Of a stretch of 64,000 nucleotides of DNA, positions 6,262-50,376 are shown in pieces. Location: positions 16,740,001 to 16,804,000 of the forward strand of contig CM119372.1 in NCBI GenBank assembly GCA_051294905.1, in the 5' to 3' direction. This DNA comes from Botryllus schlosseri. Its lineage: Eukaryota. Positions within the stretch are counted from its first letter, which is position 1; every line of letters starts with the position of its first letter. A program made the translations under genes and the position numbers. Under the pieces are notes generated by a model, which did no database searches, was not told the origin of the DNA, and was given only the letters and a program-made list of their open reading frames with translations.

Positions 6262-6644
6262 ATGGATTTTCGAAGGCTATTGCTGTTTGGCGTCTGTTTC
6301 TTATTCCAACAAGCGGATACAAGGAAGAGTGCAAAAAGTATGCGACTCTGTAATAGATTCCGAAGCCATTCGTTGAGGAAGGCCTGCCAGAAATCTCTTG
6401 CGAGTACGCAGACGTTGATGGTCGGTGCATCGATGGGAGTAATTGACGAAAGATATTTCATGTCACCCGTTCCACCTGCTAAAATCACGGACCGCAGCGT
6501 TGTAAACAATGGCGTCGGCTATTCTTTGGGATGCACCACAAACGTACGTTGCCCTGTAAATGATTTAAGCTACGCCGAGAATGAAAGAGAAAATATCCGC
6601 AACACGTCGCCCTGGGAGTATTGCACGCATTTCGATCCTAACAG
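6262..6644 (+). CDS. IL17: IL-17 family gene g1, coding exon 1 of 2 (204-aa precursor)
   Basis: ATG at 6262 opens a hydrophobic signal peptide (MDFRRLLLFGVCFLFQQADT). The frame ends with RCP...NIRNTSPWEYCTHFDPN-AG|gtattt, the IL-17 RSxSPW/DPxR motif cut by a phase-2 donor at 6645. The symbol is family-level only; no A-F orthology is implied. Confidence 0.93.
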
Positions 6645-7952
6645 GTATTTGTTATTATTGTTCCTCGCGGCAGATTTAGGCATTAATCCGTGATATGTCA
6701 ATACGATTTGAGATGGGTTCATGGTCATTGGTCATGGTCAACTAATCATCATACGTGTGTACGACTTGACGACTGCACGACGTTTGCGCCCACATGATGA
6801 GATTATACATTTGGATTTCACAAATTGTATTCTCGTTAATTGATTTAAACTTTAATGAATCCATCAGAAAACAAGGATCAAATAAGGGTCGGGTCCTTGA
6901 ATACGGACTTCTATCATTTTAAGCTTCCAAACCAACTGTTAGTTGGTCACACACAAGCCTGTTGCATAATTTCTGGTATATTGCTCAATGATAATTCAAG
7001 ATTTGAAACCATAGCCTTTATTACAATACTCGCAATGTTTGAATTAAATACAAGGAACAAGACGCAATCGCGTTGTATCGCAACGCTGTTGCAAAATGGC
7101 GATGGTATTCGTAGATTTTGAGGTAATCATTACATTCGAAGCAATAACCGTTACAATTTTCATGAGTCATTTGTTACATCTAGAAGACGCCACTCCGTCT
7201 CAAGAATTAGCCGTCCTAGAGTCTTAGCAATATAGCCTACGATACGTAATATGCTGATGAACTTTTTTAGCGCTTAGAATTCCGATAACAAAGGTATAAT
7301 ACTACGCACGGCACTGGTAAATCCGTGTTGCGCAAACGATGTGACGCTCATACAGTCGTACACACGACAATGGCGTTTCGCCAGGATGACATGCTGACAT
7401 GTTACATTAATACTGACAATTATCGTAGGAGATACTCTATGTTGATTTGTCACGCCAGCACCACTCCTGGGGCAGACACTACGTTGTGGAGTATTCATTT
7501 CCAACATATTTGTGACGATTGAATATGTTCCTTACTGTTCTTGCGGGTAGGATAAATATACGTTTGTTTGTAGATAATTTTCAAATTAGATCGGTTGTTC
7601 CAGTTATCGCATGCTTTTGCTATCACTTAACTATATATGGGCCTCTTTTATTTTTGGAATAAATGCGTATGTAAGGTGTTTCGTTATCATGATATCATCG
7701 TGACATTGATGAAACTTATTTACTTTTGTCTGTAAATCAATACCATTATTCTCGCGGAAAAAAACAATCACAGGAATAAGAAGATCTGGTATAGAAATCC
7801 ATAGTAGCCAATCAGCAAAATGAAATACTAACCGCAAGATCATGTACAAAGGTTCCAGCCGTATATGTATTCACGAATCATAATATTATGTCTATCACAT
7901 ATAATAATACCTGATTACAGTAGCAAAATATTTAACTACGCCTTTCGTTCAG

Positions 7953-8184
7953 ATTTCCGCAGTTCTTAACTCAAGCTGTGTGTCTTTGCAACGGCTGCAT
8001 TGACCCGGCAACGGGCCATCATCAGCACAGCTTGATCTCAAGGCCAATAACGACAAAGATCACAGTTATCAAGCGTGCCTCGGACGCCACACGAAAGTTT
8101 AGTGACTGCACAAGCCGGACTTGTCGTGAAGAACAAATAGACATCGATGTGGGTTGTTACTGCAGCATACCTCTATTGAATTGA
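7953..8184 (+). CDS. IL17: IL-17 family gene g1, coding exon 2 (cystine knot)
   Basis: Acceptor cctttcgttcag|A completes the Arg codon. It reads FPQFLTQAVCLCNGCIDP...SRPI...VIKR...IDVGCYCSIPLLN*, carrying the AxCxCxGC and VGCxC motifs. TGA at 8182-8184. Confidence 0.93.
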
Positions 8185-11100
8185 ATGTCTCAGCGTCACT
8201 GGTAAAGCAACGAGGGATCCGATCCAGTATGGATACACGGGATGGTGCGAAATCCTGAAAAATTCTGGTACGAACTGTTGTAAAAGGTCCTCTGTGAACA
8301 CGAAGCTACAGACTTCACGCGGCATCACTATGCTAATTCCAAATTATTGTACTTACACCGTGCAGCAGTACATGTCTGGCTGTGTTCTACCCCGCTTATC
8401 GTAATTAGCCGAAATCCAGTTTGAATTGTGTGGGATTTTGGTTGGTTGAGAGTAGTATTGGTGCATTTCGTAATATCAAACTCACATAAAGATGTGACTT
8501 TACCTAATTTTCTTATCACTTGGCACCCAGTATTGTGGGGATGCTCCGAGAATTGGAGCTCAGAAACTATTCTTCACCACCGACCCAAATATGTAATTTC
8601 CGTCTAATCACACATAGATAACTTTGCTACTGCATGGGAGTATAAAGTCCTAGGCCAAGCACGTAGCAGCGACGGAAGCAAGACATTCTATTATTAACAA
8701 CTAAATAGCGTGATATGTCAAGCAAAATTCTCAAAACTCCGTATGGTTTATTACGTCACAAGGTGCCTCTTATAGATTTGGGATGAATTCCCTTTGCTGT
8801 CATCGTGAGACGGCTGAAATTCAACGAATTCTGATCATGTATGTTAAGATTAACGGAAACTACTGGTATTTCACGAAAAAATGGTCACTGGGAATAGATA
8901 GAACCTGTCAAGGTTCGTTTGCCAACGCTAAACTCTGAATTACAAACCGAACGTTAGCATCACCTCTCTTTGGTGCTCCAATATAGACGGAGCAATGTGG
9001 ATCATATCCACGTACTAGATGCGCTATGCGCACGTGTTGACAAATCTTCATGTATATAGATGTAATGGTAATATACGAACTATGTCGCGAACAACTGCCG
9101 TTACAGTATCACAGAGATATCGTCCTATTTATTGCGCAGAATTATATTTATAAAATCCTGACGTATTTAAAGTCACTGGACTACGTTTTGTCTATTTTAA
9201 GAAGTGCTACAGATGTGCATCTATCAGTGTCCGGACAGCAAAAAATCTGATAATGACCTGTTCTTGAACAGGTATCATTGTTCCGTGGAAAATGACGTGG
9301 GATTCTACACCTGCGGAAACTATAGCGTCCAAGTCACCAATAGACACCGTTATTGTGATGGTTGGAAGGGAAGTCCAATAAGTTTTGTTAAACCGATGTA
9401 CGAACCTGACACCGCGCACTTCCGAAAATTAACAAGCAGTTTCTGTCAGCTTACTTCCGAGATATCAGTAATATCCAATTGAATGGGACTCGGGAGTGTC
9501 ATTTTAAATGTATTGCGACATACATTTCGTAATCAACCTTGCACCTTAGTATTTCTGTCGGTATGATATTGACTTGAACTATGGTAACATTGTAATACAA
9601 ACACGATCCCTATTATATTCAAACTCAGTTGATTCATACATAGATTTCTATCTTATAAGGAAAAGCAATTTAGGTACATAATTATAGCGACCAGAGATTC
9701 ATAGTCCAAAATTCATTATTCTAATATTTGATGTCACTGTACCCGTAACACTAGCAACGACAATGGCATCATTTAACTTTTCATTTCACATTTTACTCGT
9801 TCTGATTATAATTTTTGTCTAATACCTACAGCACTTGCATAGTACGTCTTGCATGAAATATATCGCATTCGTTTCATAGATGTTACGGAAGGGTGTGTTA
9901 CCTATGCAGCCACAAATTGAATTATTTATGTTAATAAACAAGATACAATCTGTTATTTATTGATGCTACTTCCTGGAACAGACGGCGAAAGGCTTTCGCC
10001 TGCGTAGTGAACAATATTTATGCAAAAATCGTTATTTATCAATTGTATATCTCCATCATCGGTGCCTGTCACCATATATATTTGTAACCGGTTTATCTTG
10101 TAAGAAAACAAAAAATATTACAGTTTTCTTGGGAACGAATATATTCAGAAGACCGACACGCAACGCACTAGTCGGTGTAAATAGATCGCGCCGTGTGTGT
10201 GCGCTGTGCCTGTGATTCGTACAAATATTGTGCCTCGCGTGAGTGCAGACGTCTATACACTGCATGATGATGATGAAGCAACGTTGCATATCTGTTCGTG
10301 CTTGGTGTCAAGATCGACTGGGAATTCTTCATGTGCACATAAATTAGAAGAAGCATGCCCAAATATGCTTGCTTGACTTCGACGACACTCCTATATGCCA
10401 TTTATAACATATCGGAATGTTTACTCCAGCGCAATTCAAAATATCAGCGATTAAATGGCGATTACGATCTCAACGTGCTCTATCGAGCACTCCCAAGGCT
10501 GGTAAGTGCTAATGAAGGCAGCTCTTTAGCGATGATCAGTTGTATATCAGACAGGATACAACGGATACGTGATTCGTTTCTGATTACGCTTGTCTCGCAT
10601 ATCCATTGTAGCGGCGTTACAATTTGAAGGCACATTTATTTCCGTTCAGTTACGAAACGGATGATTTACAAACCCAATATCAAGCATGTACGTTGTCTTC
10701 CCTAGTCGCGGTACAGTCACCGACAAACGCATTATGTCATTGCCTTATAGGTGAACTTCGCGACGTATATGCGATAAGATAATTGCGGTTAGGTGCCAAC
10801 GATCAGATGCGGTACAGGGGAGATTGTAGATAGCGAAATTCTGAGCAGGAGAATTATGGATAACGAAAGCGTTATATCACAGAAATTGGCGTTGGGGATA
10901 TAGATTGCGATATTCAACACCGAATGGATGATAGTTTCTTTTTTTCCAAAACATGGACTGTGAGATATATCTATTGTTTTAGAGATATGGATGACACACG
11001 GAGACCAATTTCGTTTACCTGGCTCTATTATATCGTGAAATGAGAATATCGGGTTCCAAAAGTGGAAAAACTTAATAGAATATAAATGTAGGCACTGATG

Positions 11101-13376
11101 GATCGTGATTGTTAAGTACAGAAATAGGTTCGGACGATCTGTTGGTTTGGGTTCTAGAACGCAACTTGGCTGCGTTCGCGGCCTCAAGTAGGTCGCTAGA
11201 CCAGCGGTGCTTCGATCTGGTATAATTGAAGCTGTTAATGCTTGGTACGGGAGAGGAATGTGAATCATAAATCCGGATTTGGTGGTTGTATCACGGAATG
11301 ATTGCCAGATATCTACACCTAATACTTTCGGTTGGAAAGTTTCATTTGATCTAGAGTGAGTAAGAGACGGAGTGCATATCCCCGAATCCGAATGCATAAG
11401 TTTATAAAAGAATATGTGCCTGATTTCTCATTCCAATTGATGTATTGCATAGGGTAGGAACAATACATCTATAGGCCGATGAAGATTCGGAAAATCCCCA
11501 GGAAGATTGATCCGAGCCATTTATCATTGCTGCCGAATCAGATCTAGCGAACCGCATTTACAGTGTATTTTTAACTTTGCTGACAGCTAGGTAAAGTAGA
11601 GTCGCGAAAAGTTTATATAAAACAAGGCTTAGCACGACGCCTCTAACAAACAGCTTTGCAACGGAAGGTGTCGTACGTCGCAAATAGCGTCAACGTCGTT
11701 AACACGGCAGTCGAGCTTTAGGGCTATATACTCGCTTAAGTCGTTACGAACCGAGTCCCACGTATTGGTCACGTTCCACTGGCTTATTATCATCGCTATT
11801 TCATACATTACATATAATATTACTATATTTATTTTCATGAAGGATAACCGGCCATAATCTATTCCTAATATGAGCTATTCGCGTCGTCACAATAACAAAT
11901 GCGGGAAGGCTTTTACTTGTAAACACGGAACAAATTACTAACAAGGATTAGAGATAAATAGCGTTAGGAATGTGTGCGGACAATTTGTCAAACTATAGTG
12001 GGAACCCGGCAAGGAAACATTTCACTTCTTTGTCCGTGTCAGCGAGTTCGCTTTATGAGAGGTGTTGTCGTTTGTTCAATCAGATATATCGATGACAGCA
12101 AAGTCGACAATAATAATTAATCCAATGTAAAACTCACAATATTTGTTCAAGATTAGTTTCATCATAGGGATCAATCTCTAGGAGCATATAAGGCAACCGC
12201 TATTTCGCGGGGAGCCGTCTATAAGTTATCGGTATGCAGATGAAATATATAGGCAGATTGCGTATTCTTCAACGCTAAAGCTTCAAAATATAGATCGAAA
12301 TATGTCGAATTGGCGTCTAAGCCGGTTGTTATGATATCCTGACAAAACACGTCTGGAATATCATTCGCGCAAGTACAGTGATGTTATTTCGAACTAATTA
12401 GTAGTGACTCGTAATTGTACCGTCGCTCATTCGCGTTTTCCTGTTTCAGTACACAGTAGGTTTCCGACGAGCTTTCGTAATTCGTACGCAATAACAAGTT
12501 GCTCTCAAAGCAGATACAAGTGCTTGAAGGTTTTCATGCGGTATATTCTGCATTCGTACTCTAAATTCACGCTTTCACTTTGCCCACGCGCGCAGGCAGT
12601 CAGGCACTGCCTGAAATGCGGGAATGAGTCAAAATCGACGCCTTGGAATGAACGGCGGTAAAATGCGTCGCGTCCGAATGATTCTCTTCGGACATCAAGC
12701 ATTGCCATTTTCGGGTGTGATGAATTCTTTACATATTAGAACCAATTATGCATTCAGAGGTACATGCTATAATCGTAAGACGCTATGATTTACGGCGAAA
12801 TCTGAGTGATTTGCCATAATTAAATTTGAAAGGAATTATTGCCAATAATTTTGTTGATTGATTCATTTCGCATTAGTGTAATCGATAATCACCAAAGCAA
12901 CACCATTTTCATTCGGTATGACGTATGTCGCGAGGCAGCAGGTACAGCAGAATTTATACTTGAATCCGCATTGGATACAGGTCTACCGCAGTCATATACA
13001 GACAACCATAGCGACGAGATCGTGAATACTAGATCGTCAGCATATATAATTGTTAGCCTGTATTGAATCGCGCGTTACTTGGAAACAAGTCAAGTTTCGT
13101 GGCAGCGGCAATCCCGAATCTATTTCGGAGGGTCACAAAATGTTATCTTGCGACCCAAGTGCACTGTCACTATCTCTTCCGGCCATTTATCGTTTGCGAT
13201 AATGGCAGCAGCATTTCAAGGCCATTACCTTCGGGTTGACGTGTGTTGTCATAATCCATAACAATCGTGACAATTGAAACGGCACCGTCACTCAAAAGAC
13301 GCCGGGAATTTTGATGAACTTTTGACTCACGCTTTAAAACATGGTTGTTTTCATTCTCAGATAAATTACAAACACT

Positions 13377-13984
13377 ATGAAAATGCAAGCCAAAACATAC
13401 TGCCTGTTTGCTATATATATCACAACATGCTGTGTGTACGGCAGGAGCATACGGGCGAAGAGAGACGTTGCCATTCCGAAACATCTAATGAATCTTTTTC
13501 ATTGGGGACAACGCTTTCAGCACTTGGGAACGGGGATCATCGACCTGAACGAATTAAGGGAAAACAATTCGACTGAATCCGTCGATTTCGAACCGACCAC
13601 GATCCCACCGCCCCTTGGGGGCAACGTCGTGTCTGGATCTATAGCCGAAGACGACGAAATGAACGAAGCGCTGCCCGGTCAGAATCAATCAGAGATTTTA
13701 AAAGAATGTAGGAAGATATTGGACAAGGATCTTCGCGACATCTGCATAAGGGTCGCCACTAACCCAATACTGAAAACCATGACTGGTGTGCGCGCGTACG
13801 CTGCTCAACAGTCGCGATACACCACGAGCAGGGGCTTCGCATCTGTCGCCGGCCCTCGACTAAAACACTCCGTGTGCAAGGAGAAAACCATCTGTCCAGT
13901 ATATCGAACGGGCGAGCAGAGCCATTTTGTTAGCCGCCGAAGCCTATCTCCTTGGACAATGTGCCACGAATTTGACCCCAACAG
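13377..13984 (+). CDS. IL17: IL-17 family gene g2, coding exon 1 of 2 (282-aa precursor)
   Basis: Signal peptide MKMQAKTYCLFAIYITTCCVYG (the start could be the second Met at 13383), then RAKR. Ends ICP...SRRSLSPWTMCHEFDPN-AG|gtaagc, phase-2 donor at 13985. Confidence 0.94.
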
Positions 13985-14379
13985 GTAAGCCCGACGATGA
14001 GATGTTTACCATCTATATAGGTGAAAAATATGATTAGCGTATAATGCCGTGGACTGTTTTGTTTTTGCCTCTTCTATTAGAATAAATCTGTAAGATAAAA
14101 CCATAGCATGTGTTCTGATCCGCGTCAATGTAAAGGGAACAATTTACATGCAAATTGCTGTAATCATTTCTCGGCATCTCGGCATACCATACAATTATAT
14201 GCCACTCAACCATGTCGGTTAAGTCGCCTCTAATGCTCTAATTACTAGCCCTTGACACTTTGAATCGCTTAAACGTATCACGTTCAAATGCACACAACAT
14301 ATAGATAAGTATAGTCAGCTCATCGCTACCTAACGTATCTTGTCATGAAGATGAAGGCTTATGGTTTGCATTCTTCCAG

Positions 14380-14620
14380 ATTTCCGCAATGGCTCAATAA
14401 AGCAGAGTGTCTGTGTCAAGGATGCATAAGTCAGATTGACGGCAAGGAAGATATTAGAAACGTCCACTCGCAGCAGCTTTCCGTCGACATTGCCGTGCTG
14501 AGAAAAGACAACGTGGTGATGGATTTCAGCAAATGCACCAAAGAGACTTGCCGAGAAGGCATCGAAAGCATTGCTATCGGCTGCCATTGCGCGCTGTCGA
14601 AGATTATAACGAGCACATAG
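14380..14620 (+). CDS. IL17: IL-17 family gene g2, coding exon 2 (cystine knot)
   Basis: Acceptor ttcttccag|A; reads FPQWLNKAECLCQGCI...AVLRK...IAIGCHCALSKIITST*; TAG at 14618-14620. Confidence 0.94.
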
Positions 14621-15021
14621 TCGCCAATCGGCGATCACCGCGCTTCGGCACCGAAGATCCAGAATCCAGATGCCGGTTTCAGCCGGAATATCATGGCAAC
14701 CGTGGGGTCCACGTGATGATGCACCGAAATCTCGAGAACGGACCGCTGTAGTCCCATCACATCTGGCCGCGAATGATGCAGTCCCCAGTTTTCGTGCGGG
14801 ATAATCCTTCCTACGCAAACATAAAACTGTGAAGTCCCCCGAGATTTCAGCAACGAACTCATACTTCGTCCCCCGAATCGACAATTGACGGCAATCGCAG
14901 AGAAGCACCCGGCAACCTCTGTTCGGATTCCAATTGAGTGATGTCTCTTGAATGCATGCTATGGACGAAATCAGTTCCAATGTCACATTTCTATGTTCCA
15001 AATGATTTGTATTATATATTT

Positions 15022-15027
15022 AATAAA
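15022..15027 (+). other. Candidate polyadenylation signal of g2
   Basis: AATAAA about 400 nt after the g2 stop, at the transition from a GC-rich 3' region to AT-rich sequence. Confidence 0.3.
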
Positions 15028-16140
15028 AGATATATGTCATCCATACATATTCGTACAAATTATCAAGTCTAATTTAATTTCTCACATTTTACGCTACGTA
15101 TTTATATTCATTTTCTGTCCACTCTTCGTTACCTATCAGTGTTTCAGTGTTATATGACAGTATTGTATGTCATCTCTCGTTGGAATACAATGCCTGGAGT
15201 AAAATCATGCACTAAACGTTGAATAACAATAGGCAAGTCGTCGGGATGGACTGTGTCAAAACCGGAAAGGGTAATCCTAATGCAGTTCAAATGTACCAGC
15301 AGTCAACACTAGCTGATGTGTGGGATAAAGAGGAAGCAAAGGAGGTCAAAATAGCATTTTGCACGGAATGGAGGATGTAACAGCGTCGGGGATGATATGA
15401 AAACTGCGGGAGCGCTGATATGCTAAAATACCATACGCGGTTGCATATATAATCCACGTATGATATTTTTGCAGCTACTCAAAGTAATATGTGATGTCCG
15501 TAGCGATTTCACATACCGCCTACCAATCGAAGCGATAGTTCGAGAGATAATGTTGATAATGATAACGGTGTCGCGTAAATTGGCATTTCTGTTCACTAAA
15601 TTATGCCGAAATTACGATCTTCATACCGTCACCATCATGGACGAACATATCATAATCGCATTCCCCATTTGCCACACATTCTAAATATGCAGATCGAATT
15701 CCCAGTATGACTCTAAACATGTCCATCGATTTAATTCCGTCAAGTAGTGACAATACTGAACGTTTTGAAAACAACCATGATTCTACGAATTGGCGACCGC
15801 AATGTATAAGATGTTGAATCATATGCATGAGCGCAAAAGCATCAAATTCGCGACGCATTATCTGCATTTGTTGCCGGTGTACATATTGACTTATCATCAG
15901 CGTCAACAGGAAACAAACACGCTGTCTGGCAGGAAAAGTGAGTGCTCTCGGAGGAAACTCACTTGCCGTGCGACGCCTCAACCGCACATTTCTAAATCAC
16001 TATAGATGTCAGGGAGAATTTTGACTTCAGGGTTTTTTCGAAATATTTAATCCCACACTAATAGTGGTGATCCATAACGAAGCGGGTCGACCGCGGTCGG
16101 ACTACAACCGACAACCCATTGTACTTTCGACAACTCTTAC

Positions 16141-16412
16141 GGAGCAAGATGGTGTAATGGTGAGGCGTCCGTCTTCTTGATCGGTAGGTCATGGGTTCGA
16201 TCCCCGGCCGGGTCAGACCAAGGACACGAAGATTGTGTCCTCAGCATCCTGCTATAGACGCTCAGCATCCGCGGATAGCATGAAGGAGAAAAAACGATGG
16301 TGCAGACTAGGTGACCTTACTGCTGTATCGCATCTCCGTCGTCAAAGCATCTCGATGGTGCAGGCGAAAACGAATGTCACCTTACTCTCTCTTCTCTATC
16401 TCTCTGTCTCTC
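16141..16412 (+). mobile_element. tRNA-derived SINE
   Basis: Pol III A box TGGTGTAATGG and B box GGTTCGATCCC, then about 170 nt of non-tRNA body and a (CT)n tail. Confidence 0.75.
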
Positions 16413-22620: not shown

Positions 22621-23185
22621 TCTATAGATTCTTTATTAATGCCAAGATTGGATTTCCGACATACATATTTCACGGGATTGTCGACAAAATCCGTATAGAA
22701 TTAATGCCTCGGGGAAATCATTGTGTTTAATATGCCCTGAAACAAGTTTTTTTGATACAACAATAGTTTTTGCTGCCATTAGAGTTGAAGTCAGTCTAGT
22801 TATCGTTATCCTTATCTGCTGCCAGTCAAGTTGTGGTGGAAGTATGAAATAATAGCTTCAATGCTTATATTATATATACATATCTTGTTAATACTCGGTT
22901 AGTCAGTTCACTATCACCTGCTACAGTTTGATTGCCGGAAGAATGAAAATGCAACAGAACACCAAGAAAATAATTGTAGCGTCCACAAGTAACGAGAACC
23001 GTGCTAGAATTATTACGCTATTCTGGTTATGAATAAGGAGATGATCTGCTGCTTCTGTCACAGCTATCGGCCTACGTTCTCAGACCGGAAGTGGGCTGTA
23101 GTGAGGTTCTGAGCCTATGATCCGCCATAGATATACAGGGTTAACAATGCCTAATACAATGACAAATGATATTTAGGCGAGAAAT

Positions 23186-23822
23186 AATAGACACTTACGT
23201 GACCTTTGACACGGACCAATCATATTGCAGTGCGATGTAAACAAACAGCGATTTAGGGCAAGCTTACTATTTGTGAGCTCTTATGGCGGATGGTGGTTGG
23301 CGGATGAATTCACAGTTCACTCACATTGTATCAGGCATATCTGATTTGGATGAATGATAATAGCATAGAATATAGAGCCAGTGTCTATTTACAGTATTCT
23401 AAGCCAAAATAACCAGCAATGGTGGCAACTGCGCAGTATGATGTGTCCTAAAATGCATGCATTTTGATAACATTGCAGACAAAGCAAGCATAGCTGTTTC
23501 TTGTTATTCGTATCCTGCAGTACGGTATACGAATAGCCAGAAATACCAATGCTTGCTTCATCCGAAAAGTTGTCAAATACAGCTGCGTAATTGCCATCAT
23601 TGCAAGGTATTTTGAATAGAAAACTGTACATACATACTAGATCTATGTTATTACCATTCATCTAAATCAGATATGCCTGATACAATGTAATTGAACTATG
23701 ACTTCATCCGTCAACCTTTTTGCCATATGAGCTCACGTATAGAAGCTTGCCCTACATCGCCGTTTGTTTACATCGCACTGCAATCTGATTGGTCCGTGTC
23801 AAAGGTCACGTAAGTGTCTATT
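23186..23822. repeat. Long inverted repeat (foldback), arms about 185 bp
   Basis: aatagacacttacgtgacctttgacacggaccaatc... is mirrored by ...gattggtccgtgtcaaaggtcacgtaagtgtctatt. Arms are about 23186-23372 and 23641-23822. Confidence 0.85.
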
Positions 23823-24194
23823 GTTCCTGGGTTACGAAGATTCTCTTAGACCTCTAAGCCCGTTGCGGCACGCGAACCAAGAATGTGCAATGTGCAATTG
23901 TGCATTGTGCAATGTGCATATATAATGATGCGCATGTACGGTTGTGTGGCCTGGGAAAATTAACGAAGCTCGAGGATCTCCCTTTCGATTTTGGATTTCG
24001 TTATCACGGTCTGCTAATAAACTGTGATGTTATTGCGTTTCAGAATAGTGCTATATCACTCAATATTGTATACATTTCTTTCCTATGAAAATGTCGATTT
24101 TTCTGCAATTAACAGTGTGACGCGACGTGATTTCATAGGCTCGTGTACTGTACACGTTCGTGTTCACAGCCAACTTTCTACAAAGATTCGTGGT

Positions 24195-24469
24195 GGTGGC
24201 GAGATAGCGTAGTAGTATTCACAGCTGCATCACCAATGGGTTGTGGGTTCGAGTCCGAACGAGGTCTACCTAAGTGTTGGAGGTTTTTCTGGGCTCCTCC
24301 TTGCCAACTTATCCGTGTAAGCATTGTCTCATAGAAGCCTAGAAGTGAGCCGCGCAACAAGTCGACAGCTACAGAATAAAGATGATAAAACTTGCATGGG
24401 GTAATTGACAAATGACCATAGTAGTCGACAAAACACCATGAACATTAATACTACAAACAACAAGAACAA
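24195..24469 (+). mobile_element. tRNA-derived SINE, family S copy 1
   Basis: B box GGTTCGAGTCC, tRNA-like head, body collinear with 26090..26360, (caa)-like tail. Confidence 0.75.
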
Positions 24470-25233
24470 GTATTCTTGTTCACACGAAGTTCTCACTATT
24501 CGCATCAAATAGTACAACTATAGCTTTCGGCGTTTGGAACTTGTCGCTATATGGCTATACGCTTATTCACAAATTACATTGAACGTCGGTTATTGCGCAA
24601 ACGAAAAACGTCTATAAATGCATGTTCCAAATAAAACGCTCCTAATTTTACTGGATCGCTGATTAAATCGTGCTGTTGATCAAAAACCCGCTGCAAACCA
24701 TATATGATTCAACTGCAACCAGCATCAAAAACGGTGCCATCTTAAATTGGAATCTCGGCCATTTTTTTGAAATTATTATATTTTTGGTGGCAATTATCGT
24801 CTCTTAGCTATGACCTAACGTCGTGTTTCAGGCATTGTTGAAGGTAGAGTTCTGCTTTTTCCATCCATCCAGGCCATCTGGAGAAGGGCCTGTGATGGAG
24901 TTTGTAAAGAAACATTGCTAATAAATGAAAATAAATTATGACACTGATTAGATGAAACACCGTCTATATGGCCTCGTTAGAACGATGGTGATTTGTTTCA
25001 TTTATATTTATATGTTTTTTTTTATTTATATGTTCCCAAAATGATATATAATATAGAGGATATTTATCGCCCAGACGATTAAAGCCGTAATTATCAATCT
25101 CCGTCTCTCTAGTGAACGGTAAAAAATAGATTTAATTAAAAATATTGTCAATGATCTGTCACTCCACCAAATCATTATTCAGTTGAGACAAACAGTGAAC
25201 AGTATATGCATACGCACCGCCTCAGCTAAGCAT

Positions 25234-25296
25234 GTATGTTACTGTAATTGTAAGGTAATGGGTCTTTTATATAAAATATTCTTTGTACATTTTAAG
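25234..25296 (+). other. Candidate 63-nt 5'UTR intron of g3
   Basis: gtatgt donor and tacattttaag acceptor 11 nt before the ATG; Inr-like TCAGTT at 25179-25184 upstream. Alternative donors (gtaagg, gtaatg) lie nearby. Confidence 0.45.
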
Positions 25297-25307
25297 GAAA
25301 AATAAAT

Positions 25308-26041
25308 ATGAGCATTAGGTTTGTGGTTATCTGCACACTTTTCTCCCCATGGATATCCTGCATTTGGAGTCAACACGCAGTTGGTGAGATCCCAACTTGG
25401 GTGACGAATTCGACTGCACAATTGACGGTTGAAGAACAGCCCGAGGAAAAAGATGACCCAAAAGACAACCCGTTTATATTCCCGGTCATATTCGAACCTA
25501 CTACTCAACATATTGAGAAAACAACAACAACAACAACAACATCTCTTCCTGAATCACATTCCCCATCGGAGTCAAATAATGCGTCGCCTTCGAACGCGTC
25601 GGATAGCGGCAGTACTGGAGTTGATGATGCTGTCCTTAGCCCAAAGCCTACTGTTACAGTGACTACAAGTACAATTGATCCCAAGACAGCGAGAGTTGCA
25701 AGCCGAAAACGTAAAATGGAAAGACAAAATAAACTAAGATGTAATAAACTGCTGAAAGGAGTTCAGCGTTTGAGAAACGCCTGTCGTTCAATCACCCACG
25801 AAGCGTTGGCCAATACTGAATACGCTTACGTGATGTCAAACAATACGGACGTGGATGGGATGAAAAGAGATTTGGTCAACCAGGGACTGAGAAGAAGTTT
25901 AGATACCACCCCAATACTTCCTGGTTTACAAAATGAGAACGACATAGGTTGTCCTATTCGAACACAATGGATGGCGGGGGCGAACCCGAACGAACATAGT
26001 TTGTCACCCTGGGCATATAAGCAACATTACGACCCTAACAG
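25308..26041 (+). CDS. IL17: IL-17 family gene g3, coding exon 1 of 2 (322-aa precursor)
   Basis: Signal peptide MSIRFVVICTLFSPWISCIWSQHAVG and a Thr/Ser-rich stalk. Ends GCP...NEHSLSPWAYKQHYDPN-AG|gtaagg, donor at 26042. Confidence 0.94.
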
Positions 26042-26089
26042 GTAAGGCTGTGCGCGCCTTTGTCTTCACTTATGTGTTTGTGTTTTAGG

Positions 26090-26360
26090 TAGGCTATTCA
26101 TGGTGTTAGTCGACTACCATGGTCACTGACACCAGGCCGATATATTCTTGATTTTTATTCCGTAACTGCCGACTTATAAAACGGCCAACTTCTAGGTGTT
26201 TTGTAAGACACCGTTTACGCGGGGAAGGTGGCAAGGAGGAGACTAGATAAACCTCCAAAACTAAGGTAGGAGAATTCTGAAGTCGACCACGGTCGGACTC
26301 GAACCCGCAACCCATTGGTGTTGCAGCCGCGGAGTATACCACTGCGCTGTCTCGGCGGCC
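26090..26360 (-). mobile_element. tRNA-derived SINE, family S copy 2 (in the g3 intron)
   Basis: Reverse complement reads agcgcagtggta...ggttcgagtcc and aligns along its length with 24195..24469. Confidence 0.75.
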
Positions 26361-26588
26361 GTTGTCTTTTCATTCATTCTTCATCAGTGATGAAAACAAA
26401 TAATAGTCAGCCACATAACAATATTACCTTTCGAGCATCAATTACGGTATTGTGGTCGTGCAGAAATATTATTCGTCACTTGAAATGCTTAAATTCAGAG
26501 ATTCGAAGACATAATTATCCATAGGAGGCACATGACTTACTTTTATGCTACGCCAGACGTGTATCATCCACCATTCTATTTTTTCTAG

Positions 26589-26823
26589 AATTCCACAAAT
26601 GATGAGCGTAGCCAAATGCCTATGTGAAGGGTGCATTGATCCAGATCTGGAAGGCGAATTTATAGAAAACAAGAACTTCGTTTCGAAGGAGATAACACGG
26701 TATTTGAGAGTTTTACGAAGAGATGCTACAGCAGGAAAATCCTACTCGGACCCGAAGTCATGGCAAGAGAGCTTGGAGGAAATAGCGATAGGCTGTCATT
26801 GCATGAGACCTAGAATATTATAA
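26589..26823 (+). CDS. IL17: IL-17 family gene g3, coding exon 2 (cystine knot)
   Basis: Acceptor tattttttctag|A; reads IPQMMSVAKCLCEGCIDP...RVLRR...IAIGCHCMRPRIL*; TAA at 26821-26823. Confidence 0.94.
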
Positions 26824-27331
26824 TGTAATTTTTGCGTTCAGCATTACTTTCTGGATTTTCGGGTTGTGTAACTTCTGTATGAAAATAATCTGTGACAAGA
26901 ACGGATTTTCTATTGAGAAACTGTACCTGCAGAGCGCTCCTTTGTTGCTATAATGCGCAAATTTACGTATCTCAGATGAGCGATTTGAGAATAATCACGA
27001 GATGTCAATCAGTACATCCACTCCCTGAAAAATGCAGCATCCATTATGCTATTATGTTTGTTTTATAAAATGATATTTTTTTATTGAATTCGTGTTGATT
27101 GATGACATATGTTGTTAATGTATAATGTGGTTAACCAAAGCTATGTACCGCTTCCAGATTACGATCTTAAGACAGAGTGGAATATAAGAGATAGCGTCGG
27201 CGATACTTTGTTCCAATTCATTCTATTATGGGTGGTCAGTCAGTTAACATGTGCACTGCGCATGTTCAGGCAATAATATTCTGCTGCACAACGAGAGACA
27301 AAGCTGTTACTTGTAGCAACAGTATCTGGAC

Positions 27332-27796
27332 CAGGGGTCCCCAACCTTTTTATTGTCGCGACTCTAAATCCCGATTTGAAAATGTTCCGCGACTCCACCT
27401 CTCAATTTGGAGTGCTGATTACTAAGAAAATTGTCAGCACCTACGCCCAAATCTACTTACGACCTATGTGTGAAGCTGGCGACTATGTGCACAGTAATAG
27501 CAATTATCACGAATTCCTTAGATTAGGAAACTCAATCAAGGCTATAGCCGAGCGTATGTGTATATATTATAGGCTACTTGTAGTTTTCCTAGAAGGAAAA
27601 GATTCGCATTCCTCAGAGGCCGTTTTTTCTTTTATCTTGCATAAATGAACTAAAATATTCAGAAATGAGCCGCCGAAAGCTTCCGCTTAATTGCACGTCA
27701 TGTAATAGTCATTGGTATTTAATTGTTGTATCTGCCACCCTATAGAATGGGCAAACGGCACTTTTGCGGTCGTGACCCATATGTTGGGAATCCCTG
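27332..27796. mobile_element. Degenerate hAT-type MITE
   Basis: caggggtccccaac ... gttgggaatccctg imperfect TIRs; flanks do not form a TSD. Confidence 0.5.
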
Positions 27797-30533
27797 ACCG
27801 ATAAGCCACCTAAGAATGTGTCACTTGACACATATATGTGTCAGTAGATACAGCATTATTATAAATCTGCGTCCAAAAATTCGTAACTGACGAGCAGTAG
27901 CTGTGGTATCCAGAAATAAGGAACTCTGGCTTTATGAGGTGATGGTATAATGCACATATTTGGGTGCGTAATATCGAATTAAACCGTGATATCAATCACC
28001 TTTATCTACACGTTACGCCGTACTGTATTAGGAAGAAATTTCAGCATCTTTTGATTGGATCACTAGCTATTCAAGATTATATTAATAGCAACTTGCTGCC
28101 AGAAGATTTCTTGGTCAAGGCGTGACTGCAATCAGCAGCTAAAATTCTGGGAAACCCCACCGTGCGGGAATGTAGGTCAGTTATCTATAGTTATATTCGG
28201 CTTTGAATGATGGCAGAAGATGAGACAATCCCAACTATACAGAAGGCTATTGCGTATACAAACGTTTACGGAAATTTGAACGCCTTATACTTGCTTGGAA
28301 ATCAGATCATATTATAAAACCAACATCATACACGCGGTGCGCACCTTTTCTCCGTTGACAGCGTCTTTATACCGAGACCAAAGCAAATCCGGACCATGTC
28401 ACAAGTTGGCAACTCGGGAATCAGAAACGAGGTTATACGCCTGTTGCTTAATAGTTGCGGGTTCAAATTATAGGGTACAAGTAGGCAGTACTTGAGTACT
28501 CCGAAATAGAAGACATACTTTATTACTGCCACGTCTGCTGAAGAGTAACTGAAATAACTATTGCTACCGACCAGGCCCAAGTTTGCTTCTTTGCTTGCTT
28601 GATCGTTTCATGCTTATAACAGTGGCGCCTTTCACCTGTAAAGGTCACGTGAGCCATGACAGTGACTGTAAGTTATGTTCGCTGTCTTTGACTTTGTGAT
28701 CTTTTGGACATAACACTGCTTTTACAGCGAGCTCAACGACGAGGAGCCCCGATAAACCTTCAACACATAGAAAATAGATAGCAGCTGGGTTCCGCGGTTC
28801 CAAGTCAATTTAACCATTAGTTAGGGTTCCATACGTCCCATTTTCAGAGGATTTGTCTTCTTTTTTTCAATAAATTGGGAATGCCCTCGGAGGACGCCTA
28901 AATGTCCTCTATTTACGGAATTTGTCCTCTTTCTCTAAAAACAGATAATACAATGCCACCAAAAACTCTACCGCGGCGCAGCGAACGTCAGAGTTTCGCA
29001 AAAAAACGGGTAAAACTAAGATCGAGTCGAAGTGTTGACCTTTTGAAATTACCCATTTTCTTTTCCAGTGTTGCGGCTATCAGAGTTTTTAAAAAGAGTC
29101 ATCTTTTTCGGATATCAAAATATGGTAACCCTACCATTAGTAATCTTTGACATCTTATAACATCAGCACCGTCGTAGTACGGTAGCTACATCGCCACGTT
29201 TATGGTAATCAAGAGCCGCAGAAATTGAGCGTGCAGAAATTGCCTTTATTTGACGTTCGAAAATCCTTGACTAATGTTGGGCAATTGCTGCAAAATATCG
29301 GGATTGTTCTGTATGGCAATGAATGCATCCACGTCGATATTCTTGCGATGACGTAATAAATCAAGGATTGAGTGTAAGGAGTGGAGGAGCGGGATAGAGC
29401 AGAAGGGGTCGGTCGAAATTCCCTCCACCGTATGTTGTCTCTCTGTCATATTGTTTGTTTGTTTTTCAACAGAATATCTTGAATTGGTGCTGTCTAAAAT
29501 TTTAAGTTCAGACAAAAGCATATTTTGTGGTGCATGCATCTGTTTTCTGCAACACTAAATAGTTCGCAAGTTCGGGACGTAACGGGGTCGATTCCAAAAA
29601 TACACTTAAGTCCTGAAGATTTATCTGTGTAGGCTCCTCAATGTTACCTGACCGGCGCGGGCGTAGTCTTGAAAAACCCTGGCCCGAGAGCTAAAGGGGG
29701 CAGCGATATGAGGTCTATGAAACAGGAATTAGAAACACAACAAATGACTCTCGTGTAAACAGACCAGTGCCATAAATGTCAAAACGCTATTAACAGCGAG
29801 CAATACCAATGACTTCGCCTGAGCTTGCACGTGTATCTTCATCATGTGTAAGTTTTTAGGTGAATTAAAACCCGAGGTTTCGGCTGACTTTGAAGTTCAT
29901 ATTAGGACAACGAAAGCAGACGTTCCCTTTTAGGATTGTTTGCAACGTAAGAACTCATAGTTGATTTCCGAAGGAATGCAGGAATGATTCCTGTCATGCA
30001 CATTTAGCCTACGTCAAAGGCGATCGTTTCTCGCAAGACTGTTACGATTAGTAATACGATCACAAGTTAAAAATATATTTTGATCTATATTTATTTTGTG
30101 TCTATATTTGTCCTTAAAATTGGACAAACGATGTAACTCCAGATTAATGATTCAGAAATTTCGCGTGACCAATTGCCGGAGGGAGATACTATATATATGT
30201 CTAATCACGCAGAGACAAAACGTCTCGTTCCTAGCTTAAATTTCATTGCTATAAAGTCATTCAAAGTTTCAAAATCATTGTCGTTCGTGAAATTTCTGAA
30301 AGTTGTGGCAGGAAAGAAATTATAACGATTTCACATAATAATGCGGTGACTTTACTTTGCTGTTCTGTACTGAAATAGGATATAGTGCGTGATTCGATAG
30401 TGATAAGAACCTTGACAAAATTGTCAATGGCTGAGTTCTATTTTCTACCGAGATAAAGACAAAATTTAGGCGCGTGTTTTGTTGATTTGTACGATCAGGT
30501 GATGAATGTTAAAATTTTAGCGATGGTAAGCAT

Positions 30534-31719
30534 TAGGGACGGTGTGAACCTCTGAAAGGTTCAGGTTCGTGTGAACGCGAACCTTTTTGAAAGGTTCTGT
30601 GTGAACACGAACGTGAACCTCGTGACGTCACGTGACGTCATATTGCTAATTCCAACCCTATCCTTCAATGAAATGATAGCCTATATTAATGTACACGATA
30701 CCTAGTGACGACTCGGGCAACATAGCGTAACAATGCTGAAGTATATATTGACGTTTTAAACGTCGCCAAATATATCAACTGGGGCAATTAAATGATACAA
30801 TAATCCCATAAAATCAATATCTTCCGCCTTTGCCAACAATTTCGACGAGGACTTACCAGGGAATATAAGGAAAGGTAGGTGTATTTTTGTCTCTGATGTT
30901 TTTGCAGCATATACACCGAATCAAGATATACATACACACGATCTGCGCATATGCATACCATGATTACATTATGTGCATATGCCGCCGGGCAAGGAAGATG
31001 CAGATATAGCCTTGTAGCAGTGTTGGGATGGCTCAAGTCATGACTTGACTCAAATCAGACTTAAATCACCTTTTTCGTATGATAGACCGGAAAATGTATT
31101 CGGCATCCGAGTATTGCTACGTTGATTTTGATCATGGTGTGAACCGGGCATCTATGCTTGCTACTGATATTACCCCATTAACAAGATATACGGCAGTATA
31201 GCCAACACCTCAATTGCACCGATTTGGTTTTAATGATACAGTAAACATGAAGTCAAGATTGACCCCATGCGCCTGCTAGATTTTTTACATCAGAAAACGA
31301 TATCAATCTCATTGATTGGTCGAATAAGCATCATTCAATGACTGCATAGCTTATTTCGCTCGTGATGTTTTGTGATTGCGGGTCAAGCTCGCAGCAGAGA
31401 GTCACTAAATATTTACAAACGGAAAGCTGGATCTTTCGAGCAAACTTTTGCAACAAAGGAAGTGAAACTTTTGAGATTGTCAAGGTGCATGCTCGTTTAG
31501 TGTTGATTATTTTATGCTGCCAGCGCCATGCATGGAGTGGCCTGCAGTTGAAATGCAATAAATTTAAACCAACGATGTTATAATGAAGTGAAAATTGTTA
31601 TATATGAAAAAGGTTCACAGTGCAGAACCTACCAAGGTTCTGTTGTGAACGCGAACCTCTAAATTTCCGAGGTTCACACACAGAACGCGAACGTGAACCT
31701 CGCGTTCACACCATCCCTA
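30534..31719. mobile_element. Non-autonomous hAT element, family A copy 2 (1186 bp)
   Basis: TIRs tagggacggtgtgaac...gttcacaccatcccta; perfect TSD gtaagcat (30526-30533, 31720-31727). Carries an extra internal segment of about 200 bp relative to copy 1. Confidence 0.9.
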
Positions 31720-31871
31720 GTAAGCATGTTGCTATCTGTATGTAGGCCTACTTTAAATAGGACCGCATGTATTAAATCTCAGACTCCCATGAATAAAATA
31801 ATAGAAGATGTCTGCTGAATTATCATAAATATTGGCATCAACGCTGACATCGATATACATGAACTTCCCAA

Positions 31872-31939
31872 GTGAGCTTGTTACGCACGGTAATGCATAT
31901 TCAACGCTACGGATTGCTAACAAATGAATCTAGTTTCAG
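31872..31939 (+). other. Candidate 68-nt 5'UTR intron of g4
   Basis: gtgagc donor, CTAAC branch point at 31917-31921, tttcag acceptor 10 nt before the ATG. Confidence 0.55.
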
Positions 31940-31949
31940 ATTATTAAAC

Positions 31950-32677
31950 ATGACGTGCGGAATGCTGCTGATTTGCGCTATTTTCATTTTACGAACGCAA
32001 CACGCTGCTAGCTATCCATTGAGTATTGGTGCATCGTATGCGCCCTTCGACATAGTGTTTACGCCGCCGCCTTATACCGCTGAAAAAGTCGCAGAGGACA
32101 GCGTACGGCTACTGAAGAACCCATTTGACCACATATTCCGATATTTTAATCAAGATTACAATTTTACGACGAACGCGCCCGACGCAAATGTTCGCAATAT
32201 CACCCGATCAACAAGTGAAACGGGCACTTCTTTGTACGGGACATTATTCACCGGAACGTCAGCCAACTTAGGCGCTCTCAGCACAACACCAACCAATCCA
32301 TTGGATATGCATGACCACAGTCAAAACGGCACTAGCGCGGCAGCGACAGAGAGGGACCTCATAAAAGAAAATTGGGAAAGGTGTGAAAAACTCGCCTCAG
32401 ACCATCTTCGAGAGGCATGCCGATCCATCGTCGAAGAAACGCTCGCCAACACCGACTACGCTTACGTGCTAGTCGACGACAACGACTTGGACGGACTGAA
32501 AAAAGAGTTAACCGATCTGGGACAGAGAAGAGCTTTTGATGTCAGTCCGATGTTGCCCGGTATCCAAGGCGACTATGAACCTCCGTGTCCTTCGCGGAGC
32601 AAGTGGAATGACGGTACTCGGAACAATCAACGTAGTTTGTCACCGTGGACATCTCGGCAACAGTACGATCCTGATAG
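31950..32677 (+). CDS. IL17: IL-17 family gene g4, coding exon 1 of 2 (325-aa precursor)
   Basis: ATG at 31950 gives signal peptide MTCGMLLICAIFILRTQHAAS. Ends PCP...NQRSLSPWTSRQQYDPD-AG|gtaagg, donor at 32678. Closely paralogous to g3 (ACRSI..E.LANT.YAYV). Confidence 0.93.
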
Positions 32678-50299: not shown

Positions 50300-50376
50300 G
50301 GGAAACCATTTTCTTCAGATGCTATATTCTCCGCTTCAAAGAATTCCTTTGGAGACAATATTGATGAATAACACAC

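What the first reader, a model, noticed from the sequence alone, without database searches (positions are those of the whole stretch)
6346..32420. Conserved N-terminal C-x11/13-C (LRxxC) module upstream of the cystine knot in g1-g4
Seen: g1 CNRFRSHSLRKAC, g2 CRKILDKDLRDIC, g4 CEKLASDHLREAC (all C-x11-C) and g3 CNKLLKGVQRLRNAC (C-x13-C). The module lies about 50-57 residues before the CP motif and is retained although the surrounding sequence is barely alignable between subgroups. To my knowledge this is not part of the vertebrate IL-17A-F motif set. Inference: a disulfide-closed helical accessory element that could mediate dimerisation, latency or binding to a lineage-specific receptor.
Basis: partly seen in the sequence, partly recalled or inferred. 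Interest (0 to 1): 0.72.

Follow-up and report, generated by a model that had tools for sequence, protein, structure and literature searches.

The report
Stapled helix hairpin before IL-17 knot
Four neighbouring sea-squirt (ascidian) IL-17-type cytokine genes, and at least 33 relatives, carry an invariant pair of cysteines that most likely staples a small two-helix hairpin about 70 residues ahead of the standard IL-17 domain; the standard IL-17 profile and the papers I could search do not cover it, and its function is untested.

Summary
The window holds four two-exon, secreted IL-17-like genes on the + strand. Each has the Cys pair in exon 1 at the stated places: C-x11-C in g1, g2 and g4, and C-x13-C in g3.

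The bare pattern is common by chance. Its significance comes from conservation: both Cys are present in 37 of 37 aligned homologues, which share about 25% mean column identity. These include eight other paralogs in this genome, Styela clava proteins and unnamed Logan sequences.

Pfam IL17 starts about 70 residues downstream of the module. Solved IL-17 structures and vertebrate IL-17B/C/D models do not cover it.

AlphaFold2 predicts the same confident helix–loop–helix twice, with pLDDT about 90–96. C1 is the last residue of helix 1 and C2 is the seventh residue of helix 2. The hairpin superposes on plant α-hairpinins, whose inner disulfides have x11–x13 spacing.

Cysteine book-keeping leaves C1–C2 as partners. 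A homodimer model does not place them at the interface.

Best reading: an intrachain-stapled N-terminal α-hairpin specific to an ascidian IL-17 expansion. Its function (receptor tuning, stability or pro-region) is inferred only.

RNA evidence confirms splicing of g2. This is a new variant of a known kind, of moderate interest.

The parts
6262..6644 (+). g1 exon 1: signal peptide, module, Ca/CP cysteines, SPW...DPN and the first two bases of the split Arg codon
   Evidence: ORF and donor AG|GT; profile A1 match E 2e-25
6349..6387 (+). g1 module CNRFRSHSLRKAC (C-x11-C)
7953..8184 (+). g1 exon 2: IL-17 knot domain, 7 Cys, including the stop codon
   Evidence: Pfam IL17 58.2 bits, profile positions 15-80; acceptor AG|A
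13377..13984 (+). g2 exon 1
   Evidence: spliced contigs of runs X1/X2 and RNA-seq reads of X24
13707..13745 (+). g2 module CRKILDKDLRDIC (C-x11-C), followed by IRVATNPILKTM
13985..14379 (+). g2 intron, 395 nt, GT..AG, phase 2 inside the Arg codon of DPNR|FPQ
   Evidence: joint 13981->14377, skips 395, cut +3, in contigs of runs X1 and X2; RNA-seq depth is zero inside it
14380..14620 (+). g2 exon 2: IL-17 knot domain
   Evidence: Pfam IL17 50.5 bits
25308..26041 (+). g3 exon 1: signal peptide, S/T-rich linker, module, single CP Cys, SPW
25740..25784 (+). g3 module CNKLLKGVQRLRNAC (C-x13-C)
   Evidence: the ortholog P0003 keeps x13
26589..26823 (+). g3 exon 2: knot domain with only 5 Cys (the mid-loop pair is lost)
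   Evidence: Pfam IL17 47.6 bits; sequence
31950..32677 (+). g4 exon 1, counted from the first ATG that is followed by a signal-peptide-like stretch
   Evidence: ortholog P0001 is 73% identical
32382..32420 (+). g4 module CEKLASDHLREAC (C-x11-C)
32349..32450 (+). g4 predicted α-hairpin: helix 1 at 32349-32384 ending at C1, loop at 32385-32399, helix 2 at 32400-32450 containing C2
   Evidence: AF2 model m664fb55c0d23: H2-13, H19-35, pLDDT 89-94 over residues 1-30
38227..38476 (+). g4 exon 2: knot domain, following an intron of about 5.5 kb
   Evidence: Pfam IL17 44.2 bits; acceptor

Best explanation
g1-g4 are secreted, two-exon IL-17-family cytokine genes of an ascidian (tunicate). The C-x11/13-C pair belongs to a small N-terminal helix-loop-helix (α-hairpin) domain. 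Helix 1 ends at C1. A five-residue loop with a conserved hydrophobic residue at position 4 and a T/D/S/N helix N-cap at position 6 follows. Helix 2 then carries [LMF]-[RK]-x-x-C2 and runs into the [IV]-[AV]-x-N-P motif. The two cysteines most likely bond to each other within one chain, stapling the hairpin the way the inner disulfide staples plant α-hairpinins. The stapled hairpin stays on the mature cytokine as a rigid cap on the N-terminal extension. In solved IL-17A/F complexes, to my knowledge, that extension lies next to the dimer groove where the receptor binds. The hairpin may therefore stabilise the protein and help individual paralogs differ in receptor recognition. Shown here: presence, conservation, gene structure, expression of g2, and position outside the IL-17 profile. 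Predicted: the hairpin fold. Inferred: the C1-C2 bond, retention on the mature protein, and any role in receptor tuning.
For: - Gene models and IL-17 membership.
- g2 transcribed and spliced as modelled.
- Both Cys invariant in 37/37 homologues, with consensus C-x-x-[FLI]-[RKP]-[TDSN]-x-[RK]-[LMF]-[RK]-E-[AS]-C-x-[RK]-[IV]-[AV]-x-N-P.
- Also present in eight other paralogs of this genome in two further clusters and in Styela clava proteins.
- Two AF2 models from different subgroups give the same architecture. In P0012:120-311 (pLDDT 86.8, pTM 0.80) the elements are H9-18, loop, H24-34, with Cys at 18 and 30 and pLDDT 93-96. In the window's own g4 exon-1 piece folded alone they are H2-13, loop, H19-35, with Cys at 13 and 25 and pLDDT 89-94.
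- The g4 hairpin superposes on disulfide-stapled α-hairpins. Nigellin-1.1 (2nb2) gives rmsd 1.0 Å over 37 residues, and BWI-2c (2lqx) and Luffin P1 (2l37) give 2.2-2.4 Å. Their inner disulfides have x11-x13 spacing (Tk-AMP-X2 C9-C21, BWI-2c C15-C28, VhTI C11-C25; PMC7191063).
- Cysteine book-keeping: Ca and Cw co-occur 28/0/0/9. The mid-loop pair is lost together in g3 while C1 and C2 stay. L028 has only CP and the second Cys of CxC beyond the knot. By elimination g3's 8 Cys leave C1 with C2.
- The homodimer model (ipSAE 0.66, best control 0.00; on eukaryotes the mark was reached by 17 of 29 proteins solved as pairs of one chain and 0 of 30 solved as single chains; the runs agree in at least 67% of contacts and the partner's pLDDT is at least 66) has an IL-17-like interface without residues 18 or 30.
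Against: - No coordinates were available, so the Cys-Cys distance was never measured.
- C1 sits at the very end of helix 1 and C2 two turns into helix 2, so the geometry is plausible by analogy only.
- The full-length model is of a Styela homolog, not of a window gene, because spliced proteins could not be submitted.
- The book-keeping assumes that no extra Cys sit on unseen exons and that pairs are gained or lost together. The correlations are confounded by shared ancestry.
- The hairpin matches have Z below 5, which shows a common arrangement and not homology.
- The homodimer pass may be from memory of solved IL-17 dimers, and the tool says residues it does not list are uncertain, not absent from the interface.
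- Nothing bears directly on function.
- Dibasic RR sites in g3 and g4, and full furin sites in a sister cluster, leave removal of the module possible.
Confidence: 0.55

Rival explanations
1. Pro-region: the hairpin is part of a propeptide that a furin-type convertase removes (or keeps non-covalently bound) before the knot domain is active, as in neurotrophins, Spätzle and PTTH. This would be a latency or folding-chaperone role.
For: Full RX[KR]R sites lie between module and knot in the chromosome-2 21.7 Mb cluster (L025/L026 RHKR, L029 RQRR, L032 RLKR) and in P0013. The paralogs with a single N-terminal Cys also have RKKR, RTRR or RHRR just before the CP Cys. g3, g4 and their orthologs keep an RR at the aligned place. 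IL-17 ligands have been linked in evolution to the neurotrophin-type ligands Trunk and PTTH (PMC11087794).
Against: g1 and g2, and most of the 37 module-bearing sequences, have no RX[KR]R or RxxR at that place. AF2 gives the whole N-terminal region a defined position (pTM 0.80).
Confidence: 0.17
2. Interchain bonds: C1 and C2 pair with the other subunit's module, making a covalent dimer.
For: IL-17A/F use an N-terminal Cys for an interchain bond (my knowledge of the structures 1JPY and 4HR9). The paralogs with a single N-terminal Cys have an odd Cys count of 7, which suggests that this position can bond across chains.
Against: The homodimer model's interface does not include residues 18 or 30. 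Only residues 35-38, just after the module, touch the partner, with 6-7 Å expected error. The hairpin folds on its own with both Cys in it.
Confidence: 0.1
3. Tether: C1 and C2 each bond to one Cys of the mid-loop pair in exon 2, tying the N-terminal helices onto the knot domain.
For: In this genome the two-Cys module and the mid-loop pair nearly always occur together, and paralogs with one N-terminal Cys lack the mid-loop pair.
Against: g3 has lost both mid-loop Cys but keeps C1 and C2, and so does its ortholog's exon 1. The co-occurrence follows clades. To my knowledge vertebrate IL-17B has the mid-loop pair without the module.
Confidence: 0.1
4. No specific role: the pair is an inherited leftover of recent duplication.
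For: All the sequences are paralogs or orthologs in one lineage. The bare pattern is common by chance.
Against: The pair is invariant in 37/37 sequences at about 25% identity, where only 5 columns are invariant. The subfamilies predate the split from Styela: g2 groups with L034 and the Styela protein P0012 at 94/94 support.
Confidence: 0.03

Closest known systems
Vertebrate IL-17B/C/D (and IL-25), with long N-terminal extensions
   Same: The C-terminal domain is the same: SPW with Ser in place of knot Cys 1 (the T2 type of PMC11087794), CxCxGC, a mid-loop Cys pair and GCxC. The best fold matches are IL-17C, B and D. NCBI names one Styela member 'interleukin-17C-like'.
   Different: Alignments to their AlphaFold models start at model residue 35-55, after the module. 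Solved IL-17A/F and IL-25 chains mostly cover only about residues 77-192 of the model; a few IL-17A/F rows start at model 22-23 (and one at 41) with no more aligned residues (84-101), so the hairpin is not aligned. No C-x11-C is known in them to my knowledge. MAFFT places the single N-terminal Cys of this genome's other paralogs in the C2 column. The same could hold for the vertebrate N-terminal Cys, but that was not tested.
Ciona intestinalis Interleukin 17-3 (Q6L5M4)
   Same: It is a tunicate IL-17. The Foldseek alignment to its AlphaFold model starts at model residue 11, so it spans the hairpin region.
   Different: The fit is poor (rmsd 11 Å, 22% identity). I could not read its sequence, so whether it has the Cys pair is unknown.
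Plant α-hairpinins (Nigellin-1.1, BWI-2c, Luffin P1, Tk-AMP-X2)
   Same: An antiparallel helix-loop-helix stapled by disulfides. The inner disulfide has x11-x13 spacing (PMC7191063). The g4 hairpin superposes at 1.0-2.4 Å.
   Different: They have two CX3C motifs and two disulfides, are free 30-40 residue plant peptides, and show no sequence relation (Z below 5). This is a structural analogy only.
Pro-regions of cystine-knot ligands (NGF, Spätzle, Trunk, PTTH)
   Same: An N-terminal region ahead of a cystine-knot dimer. Furin-type sites occur in some paralogs. Trunk and PTTH appear as weak fold matches of the knot domain.
   Different: g1 and g2 have no cleavage site, and there is no sequence or fold similarity between the N-terminal regions.

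Membership tests
IL-17 cytokine family (Pfam PF06083) | Match to the IL17 profile above the gathering score | tested here: met
   Exon 2 of g1-g4 scores 44-58 bits against a cut-off of 24. Full-length Styela homologs score 63-72 bits over profile positions 1-80.
IL-17 cytokine family (Pfam PF06083) | Four knot cysteines (C-x4-C ... C-x-C) and the SPW motif | tested here: met
   CxCxGC and GCxC are present in all four exon 2 sequences, and SPW in all four exon 1 sequences.
IL-17 cytokine family (Pfam PF06083) | IL-17 fold | tested here: met
   The model of homolog P0012 matches IL-17A at Z 8.5, rmsd 2.9 Å, 95 residues aligned. IL-17C/B/D give E values from 4e-8 to 9e-7 across the listed rows. 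This was tested on the Styela homolog, not on a window protein.
IL-17 cytokine family (Pfam PF06083) | Homodimer through the knot strands | tested here: inconclusive
   ipSAE 0.66 against a best control of 0.00. On eukaryotes the mark was reached by 17 of 29 proteins solved as pairs of one chain and 0 of 30 solved as single chains. The runs agree in at least 67% of contacts and the partner's pLDDT is at least 66. The pass may be from memory of solved IL-17 dimers.
IL-17 cytokine family (Pfam PF06083) | Signals through an IL-17 receptor | not testable with these tools
   Not tested.
α-hairpinins | C-x3-C ... C-x3-C motif with two disulfides | tested here: not met
   The hairpin has only one Cys per helix.
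α-hairpinins | Antiparallel helix-loop-helix | tested here: met
   This is a prediction, and the resemblance is analogy.
Furin-processed pro-cytokine (neurotrophin/Spätzle type) | RX[KR]R site between the N-terminal region and the knot domain | tested here: not met
   Absent in g1-g4 (g3 and g4 have RR only). Present in L025, L026, L029, L032 and P0013.

The most novel reading that the evidence does not exclude
Ascidian IL-17s are modular pro-cytokines. The stapled N-terminal hairpin is an autonomous domain that either gates receptor access until it is cleaved (the furin-site cluster would be the clearest case) or supplies a second, paralog-specific receptor contact. In that reading the roughly 24-gene expansion encodes a combinatorial ligand code that vertebrate IL-17s lack.
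Probability: 0.15. Interest if true: 0.7.

Novelty: new variant of a known kind. Interest (0 to 1): 0.42.

Why it matters
Work on IL-17 outside vertebrates has looked almost only at the C-terminal knot domain. The comparative papers I read discuss only knot-domain cysteines (PMC4517768, PMC8353272, PMC5457136, PMC11087794). Tunicates are the sister group of vertebrates. A conserved, confidently foldable N-terminal domain in a large tunicate IL-17 expansion gives a concrete handle on what the poorly understood N-terminal extensions of IL-17B/C/D do. It also bears on whether IL-17 ligands can be made as pro-forms like their neurotrophin-type relatives. In practice, the motif C-x2-[FLI]-x4-[LMF]-[RK]-x2-C-x2-[IV]-[AV]-x-N-P finds the first exon of such genes, which the Pfam profile cannot see.

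Tried and rejected
- Pfam on the four exon-1 translations gave only spurious sub-threshold hits.
- A PDB profile search matched only IL-17A/F, only at the SPW region, with E about 0.1.
- The search for homologous proteins returned very few relatives. Its word filter and length window miss most eukaryotic kin. Raising the E-value limit added nothing.
- The organism names of the Logan hits could not be obtained. Only SRR numbers or coded names were given.
- Run X21 gave no reads on g2, which is no test.
- Foldseek of the isolated hairpin against PDB found nothing at E ≤ 0.001.
- The knot-domain tree is too short to resolve whether the module arose once.
- A search for upstream exons of the single-Cys paralogs found only signal-peptide-like candidates, so their lack of C1 is apparent, not proven. 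L036 may in fact carry C-x3-C-x7-C.
- A chance test of the bare pattern showed no enrichment, 79 against about 71.
- Spliced window proteins could not be submitted to the folding tools, so a Styela homolog and an exon-1 piece were folded instead.
- Dimerisation through the module: the homodimer model's confident interface does not list the module cysteines, and the tool says unlisted residues are uncertain rather than absent.


Full report
**What is in the window.** The window is G000:C2:16740001-16804000 of a 495.5 Mb eukaryotic assembly. It has no gaps and about 40% G+C.

Six-frame scans find four exon-1-type ORFs ending in SPWxxxx[FY]DP[ND]R and four exon-2-type ORFs starting [FI]PQ...CxCxGC. 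All are on the + strand. Each pair is joined by a phase-2 GT..AG intron inside the Arg codon (…AAC AG|GTA … AG|A TTT CCG, reading DPN-R-FPQ). The gene models are:

| Gene | Exon 1 | Exon 2 |
|---|---|---|
| g1 | 6262-6644 | 7953-8184 |
| g2 | 13377-13984 | 14380-14620 |
| g3 | 25308-26041 | 26589-26823 |
| g4 | 31950-32677 | 38227-38476 |

All four start with a signal-peptide-like stretch. Exon 2 of each matches Pfam IL17 at 44-58 bits against a cut-off of 24, over profile positions 15-81. Exon 1 has no Pfam match.

For g2 the model is confirmed by sequencing runs. Contigs of runs X1 and X2 (kind only guessed to be RNA) carry a joint that removes exactly 13985-14379. Raw RNA-seq reads of X24 cover both exons with zero depth in the intron.

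**The observation.** The four motifs are exactly as quoted, at codons 6349-6387, 13707-13745, 25740-25784 and 32382-32420. The CP cysteine follows C2 by 50-56 residues.

The bare pattern C-x11/13-C is not unusual. There are 79 instances in six frames against about 71 in shuffled sequence. What makes it real is conservation, described next.

**Conservation.**
- The genome has 24 PF06083 exon-2 matches. I fetched 10 kb upstream of the 20 that lie outside the window.
- The same C-x11-C, in the same place, is present in eight further paralogs. L027 lies just beyond the window. L033 and L034 are on contig 16. L025, L026, L029, L032 and L039 form a cluster at 21.7-21.85 Mb of contig 2.
- A profile of 13 exon-1 pieces was searched against 1.84 billion representative proteins. 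It found 29 proteins, and all 26 that I could align carry the pair.
- The named hits are Styela clava proteins, one of them called 'interleukin-17C-like'. The window therefore comes from an ascidian related to Styela. This fits the SPW (Ser for knot Cys 1) T2 knot type that PMC11087794 assigns to tunicates and vertebrates.
- In 37 aligned sequences with 25% mean column identity, the only invariant columns are C1, C2, the CP Cys, and P and W of SPW.
- g2 groups with L034 and the Styela protein P0012 at 94/94 support, so the subfamilies are older than the split between the two species.

**Is it covered by what is known?**
- On full-length Styela homologs, Pfam IL17 begins at the SPW region. In P0012 that is residue 219, while the module is at 137-149.
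- The PDB profile search matches only IL-17A/F, only over the SPW stretch.
- Structure searches with the full-length model hit IL-17A/F and IL-25 chains, mostly over model residues 77-192; a few IL-17A/F rows nominally start at model 22-23 (and one at 41) but align no more residues (84-101), so the hairpin is not covered. They hit AlphaFold models of IL-17C, B and D from residue 35-55 onwards.
- Only Ciona IL-17-3 (Q6L5M4) aligns from residue 11, and that alignment is poor. I could not read its sequence.
- The comparative IL-17 papers I read discuss only knot-domain cysteines. Searches for tunicate IL-17 literature found no description of an N-terminal Cys pair.

**Structure.** Spliced window proteins cannot be submitted by reference, so I folded two substitutes.

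(a) Styela P0012:120-311, a close relative of g2, with a 48-row alignment:
- Mean pLDDT is 86.8 and pTM 0.80.
- The elements are helix 9-18, loop 19-23 and helix 24-34, then QN and a short helix 37-40.
- The Cys are at 18 and 30, and pLDDT is 93-96 over residues 11-50.

(b) The window's own g4 exon-1 piece (32346-32678), folded alone with 37 rows:
- The elements are helix 2-13, loop 14-18 and helix 19-35.
- The Cys are at 13 and 25, and pLDDT is 89-94 over residues 1-30.

Two subgroups thus give the same picture, one of them without any knot domain. C1 is the last residue of helix 1 and C2 is the seventh residue of helix 2.

This fits the sequence pattern. Pro is tolerated at loop positions 5 and 7, and an N-cap residue (T/D/S/N) occupies position 6 in 29 of 35 sequences.

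The isolated model has no significant Foldseek match. An exhaustive structural comparison puts disulfide-stapled α-hairpins among its best small matches:

| Match | PDB | rmsd | Residues aligned |
|---|---|---|---|
| Nigellin-1.1 | 2nb2 | 1.0 Å | 37 |
| BWI-2c | 2lqx | 2.2 Å | 37 |
| Luffin P1 | 2l37 | 2.4 Å | 38 |

All have Z below 5, so this is an analogy of shape and not kinship. It still matters, because the inner disulfides of solved α-hairpinins span x11 (Tk-AMP-X2 C9-C21), x12 (BWI-2c C15-C28, Luffin P1 C14-C27) and x13 (VhTI and EcAMP1 C11-C25) (PMC7191063). That is the same range as the module's spacings.

**Which cysteine pairs with which?** No coordinates are returned, so I used book-keeping.
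- An extra Cys 5-7 residues before the CP Cys (Ca) and a Cys at SPWxxC (Cw) are either both present (28 sequences) or both absent (9). Neither ever occurs alone. I read them as a pair.
- The two mid-loop Cys of exon 2 are both present in g1, g2 and g4 and both absent in g3. I read them as a pair too.
- L028 has, beyond the four knot Cys, only the CP Cys and the second Cys of CxC, which I also read as a pair.
- g3 has 8 Cys: four in the knot, CP, the second Cys of CxC, C1 and C2. That leaves C1 with C2.
- An ESMFold2 homodimer of P0012:120-311 passes the tool's mark with ipSAE 0.66 against a best control of 0.00. On eukaryotes the mark was reached by 17 of 29 proteins solved as pairs of one chain and 0 of 30 solved as single chains. 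The runs agree in at least 67% of contacts and the partner's pLDDT is at least 66. The pass may be from memory of solved IL-17 dimers.
- The dimer interface is the usual one of knot strands plus the SPW region. It lists residues 35-38, just after the module, only at 6-7 Å expected error, and does not list Cys 18 or 30. The tool says unlisted residues are uncertain rather than absent.

An intrachain staple is therefore the best reading, but it is an inference.

**Other paralogs and polarity.** Six paralogs (L028, L035, L036, L037, L041, L042) appear to lack the module. Five of them have a single Cys in an R-E-x-C-R-x-[VI] context, and MAFFT places it in the C2 column. Their Cys count is odd (7), so that Cys may bond across chains.

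Their first exons are uncertain, and L036 may carry C-x3-C-x7-C. If the alignment is right, C2 is the older position and C1 was added to close the hairpin. The knot-domain tree cannot decide this.

**Function.** Nothing here tests function.
- For the pro-region idea: full furin sites (RHKR, RQRR, RLKR) lie between module and knot in the 21.7 Mb cluster and in P0013. The single-Cys paralogs have RKKR, RTRR or RHRR before the CP Cys. g3 and g4 keep RR at the aligned place.
- Against it for this finding: g1, g2 and most module-bearing sequences have no such site.
- I therefore favour a retained, stapled cap on the N-terminal extension. To my knowledge that extension lies beside the receptor groove in solved IL-17A/F-receptor complexes. 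I keep the pro-region as the main rival.

**Verdict.** It is a lineage-specific N-terminal domain of otherwise ordinary chordate-type IL-17s. I rate it a new variant of a known kind, of moderate interest.

Noticed in passing
window 43183-43431 (-), 50322-50657 (-), 52232-52618 (-): There is a possible fifth, divergent IL-17-like gene on the minus strand. It has a knot-type ORF (local HMM E 3e-9, with 'CLCRYC ... GCHC'), an exon with SCP ... SFSPWNYTLDFQWNR, and a signal-peptide ORF upstream. None of these pieces shows a C-x11-C module. PF06083 did not reach E 0.01 there.
   Followed up: partly
G000 whole genome; L001-L044: The genome has 24 PF06083 exon-2 matches in clusters on contigs 1, 2 (13.9, 16.75-16.81 and 21.73-21.85 Mb), 8, 14, 15 and 16. 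This is a large IL-17 expansion for a tunicate. PMC8353272 cites three genes in Ciona.
   Followed up: partly
L025:1160-1414(-), L026, L029, L032 (contig 2, 21.7-21.85 Mb): The paralogs of this cluster have canonical furin sites (RHKR, RQRR, RLKR) 13-18 residues after C2 and about 10 residues before the knot-proximal Cys. In them the hairpin could be released as a propeptide of about 45 residues.
   Followed up: partly
exon 1 of g1 and g2 (GCTTNVRCP ... SPWEYC; VCKEKTICP ... SPWTMC) and 26 homologues: A second covarying Cys pair: a Cys 5-7 residues before the CP Cys and a Cys three residues after SPW are both present in 28 sequences and both absent in 9. Neither ever occurs alone (Fisher 8e-9, not corrected for shared ancestry).
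   Followed up: yes
window 26589-26823 (g3 exon 2): g3 has lost both mid-loop cysteines (SYSDPKSWQESLEE against g4 FSECPGSKSKACYES). It is the only module-bearing gene in this genome with an 8-Cys mature protein.
   Followed up: partly
window 25308-25740 and 31950-32380; also L034, P0012: Long Ser/Thr/Pro-rich, Asn-dotted low-complexity stretches lie between the signal peptide and the module, for example a TTTTTTT run in g3. They look like a mucin-type, probably glycosylated, linker. g2 has RAKR right after its signal peptide, and the ortholog P0004 has RVKR at the same place.
   Followed up: no
L039:1519-1827(-), L030: L039 has Phe in place of the CP Cys (RVRFPKF) and an exon 1 that ends early, and no proper exon 2 was found for it. 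For L030 only a 42-residue end of exon 1 was found. These may be pseudogenes in the 21.7 Mb cluster.
   Followed up: no
window 13427-14749: The transcript contigs and reads of 'organism A' differ from the window at about 15 single positions in g2 (for example 13427 A>G and 14749 T>C). This looks like allelic variation.
   Followed up: no
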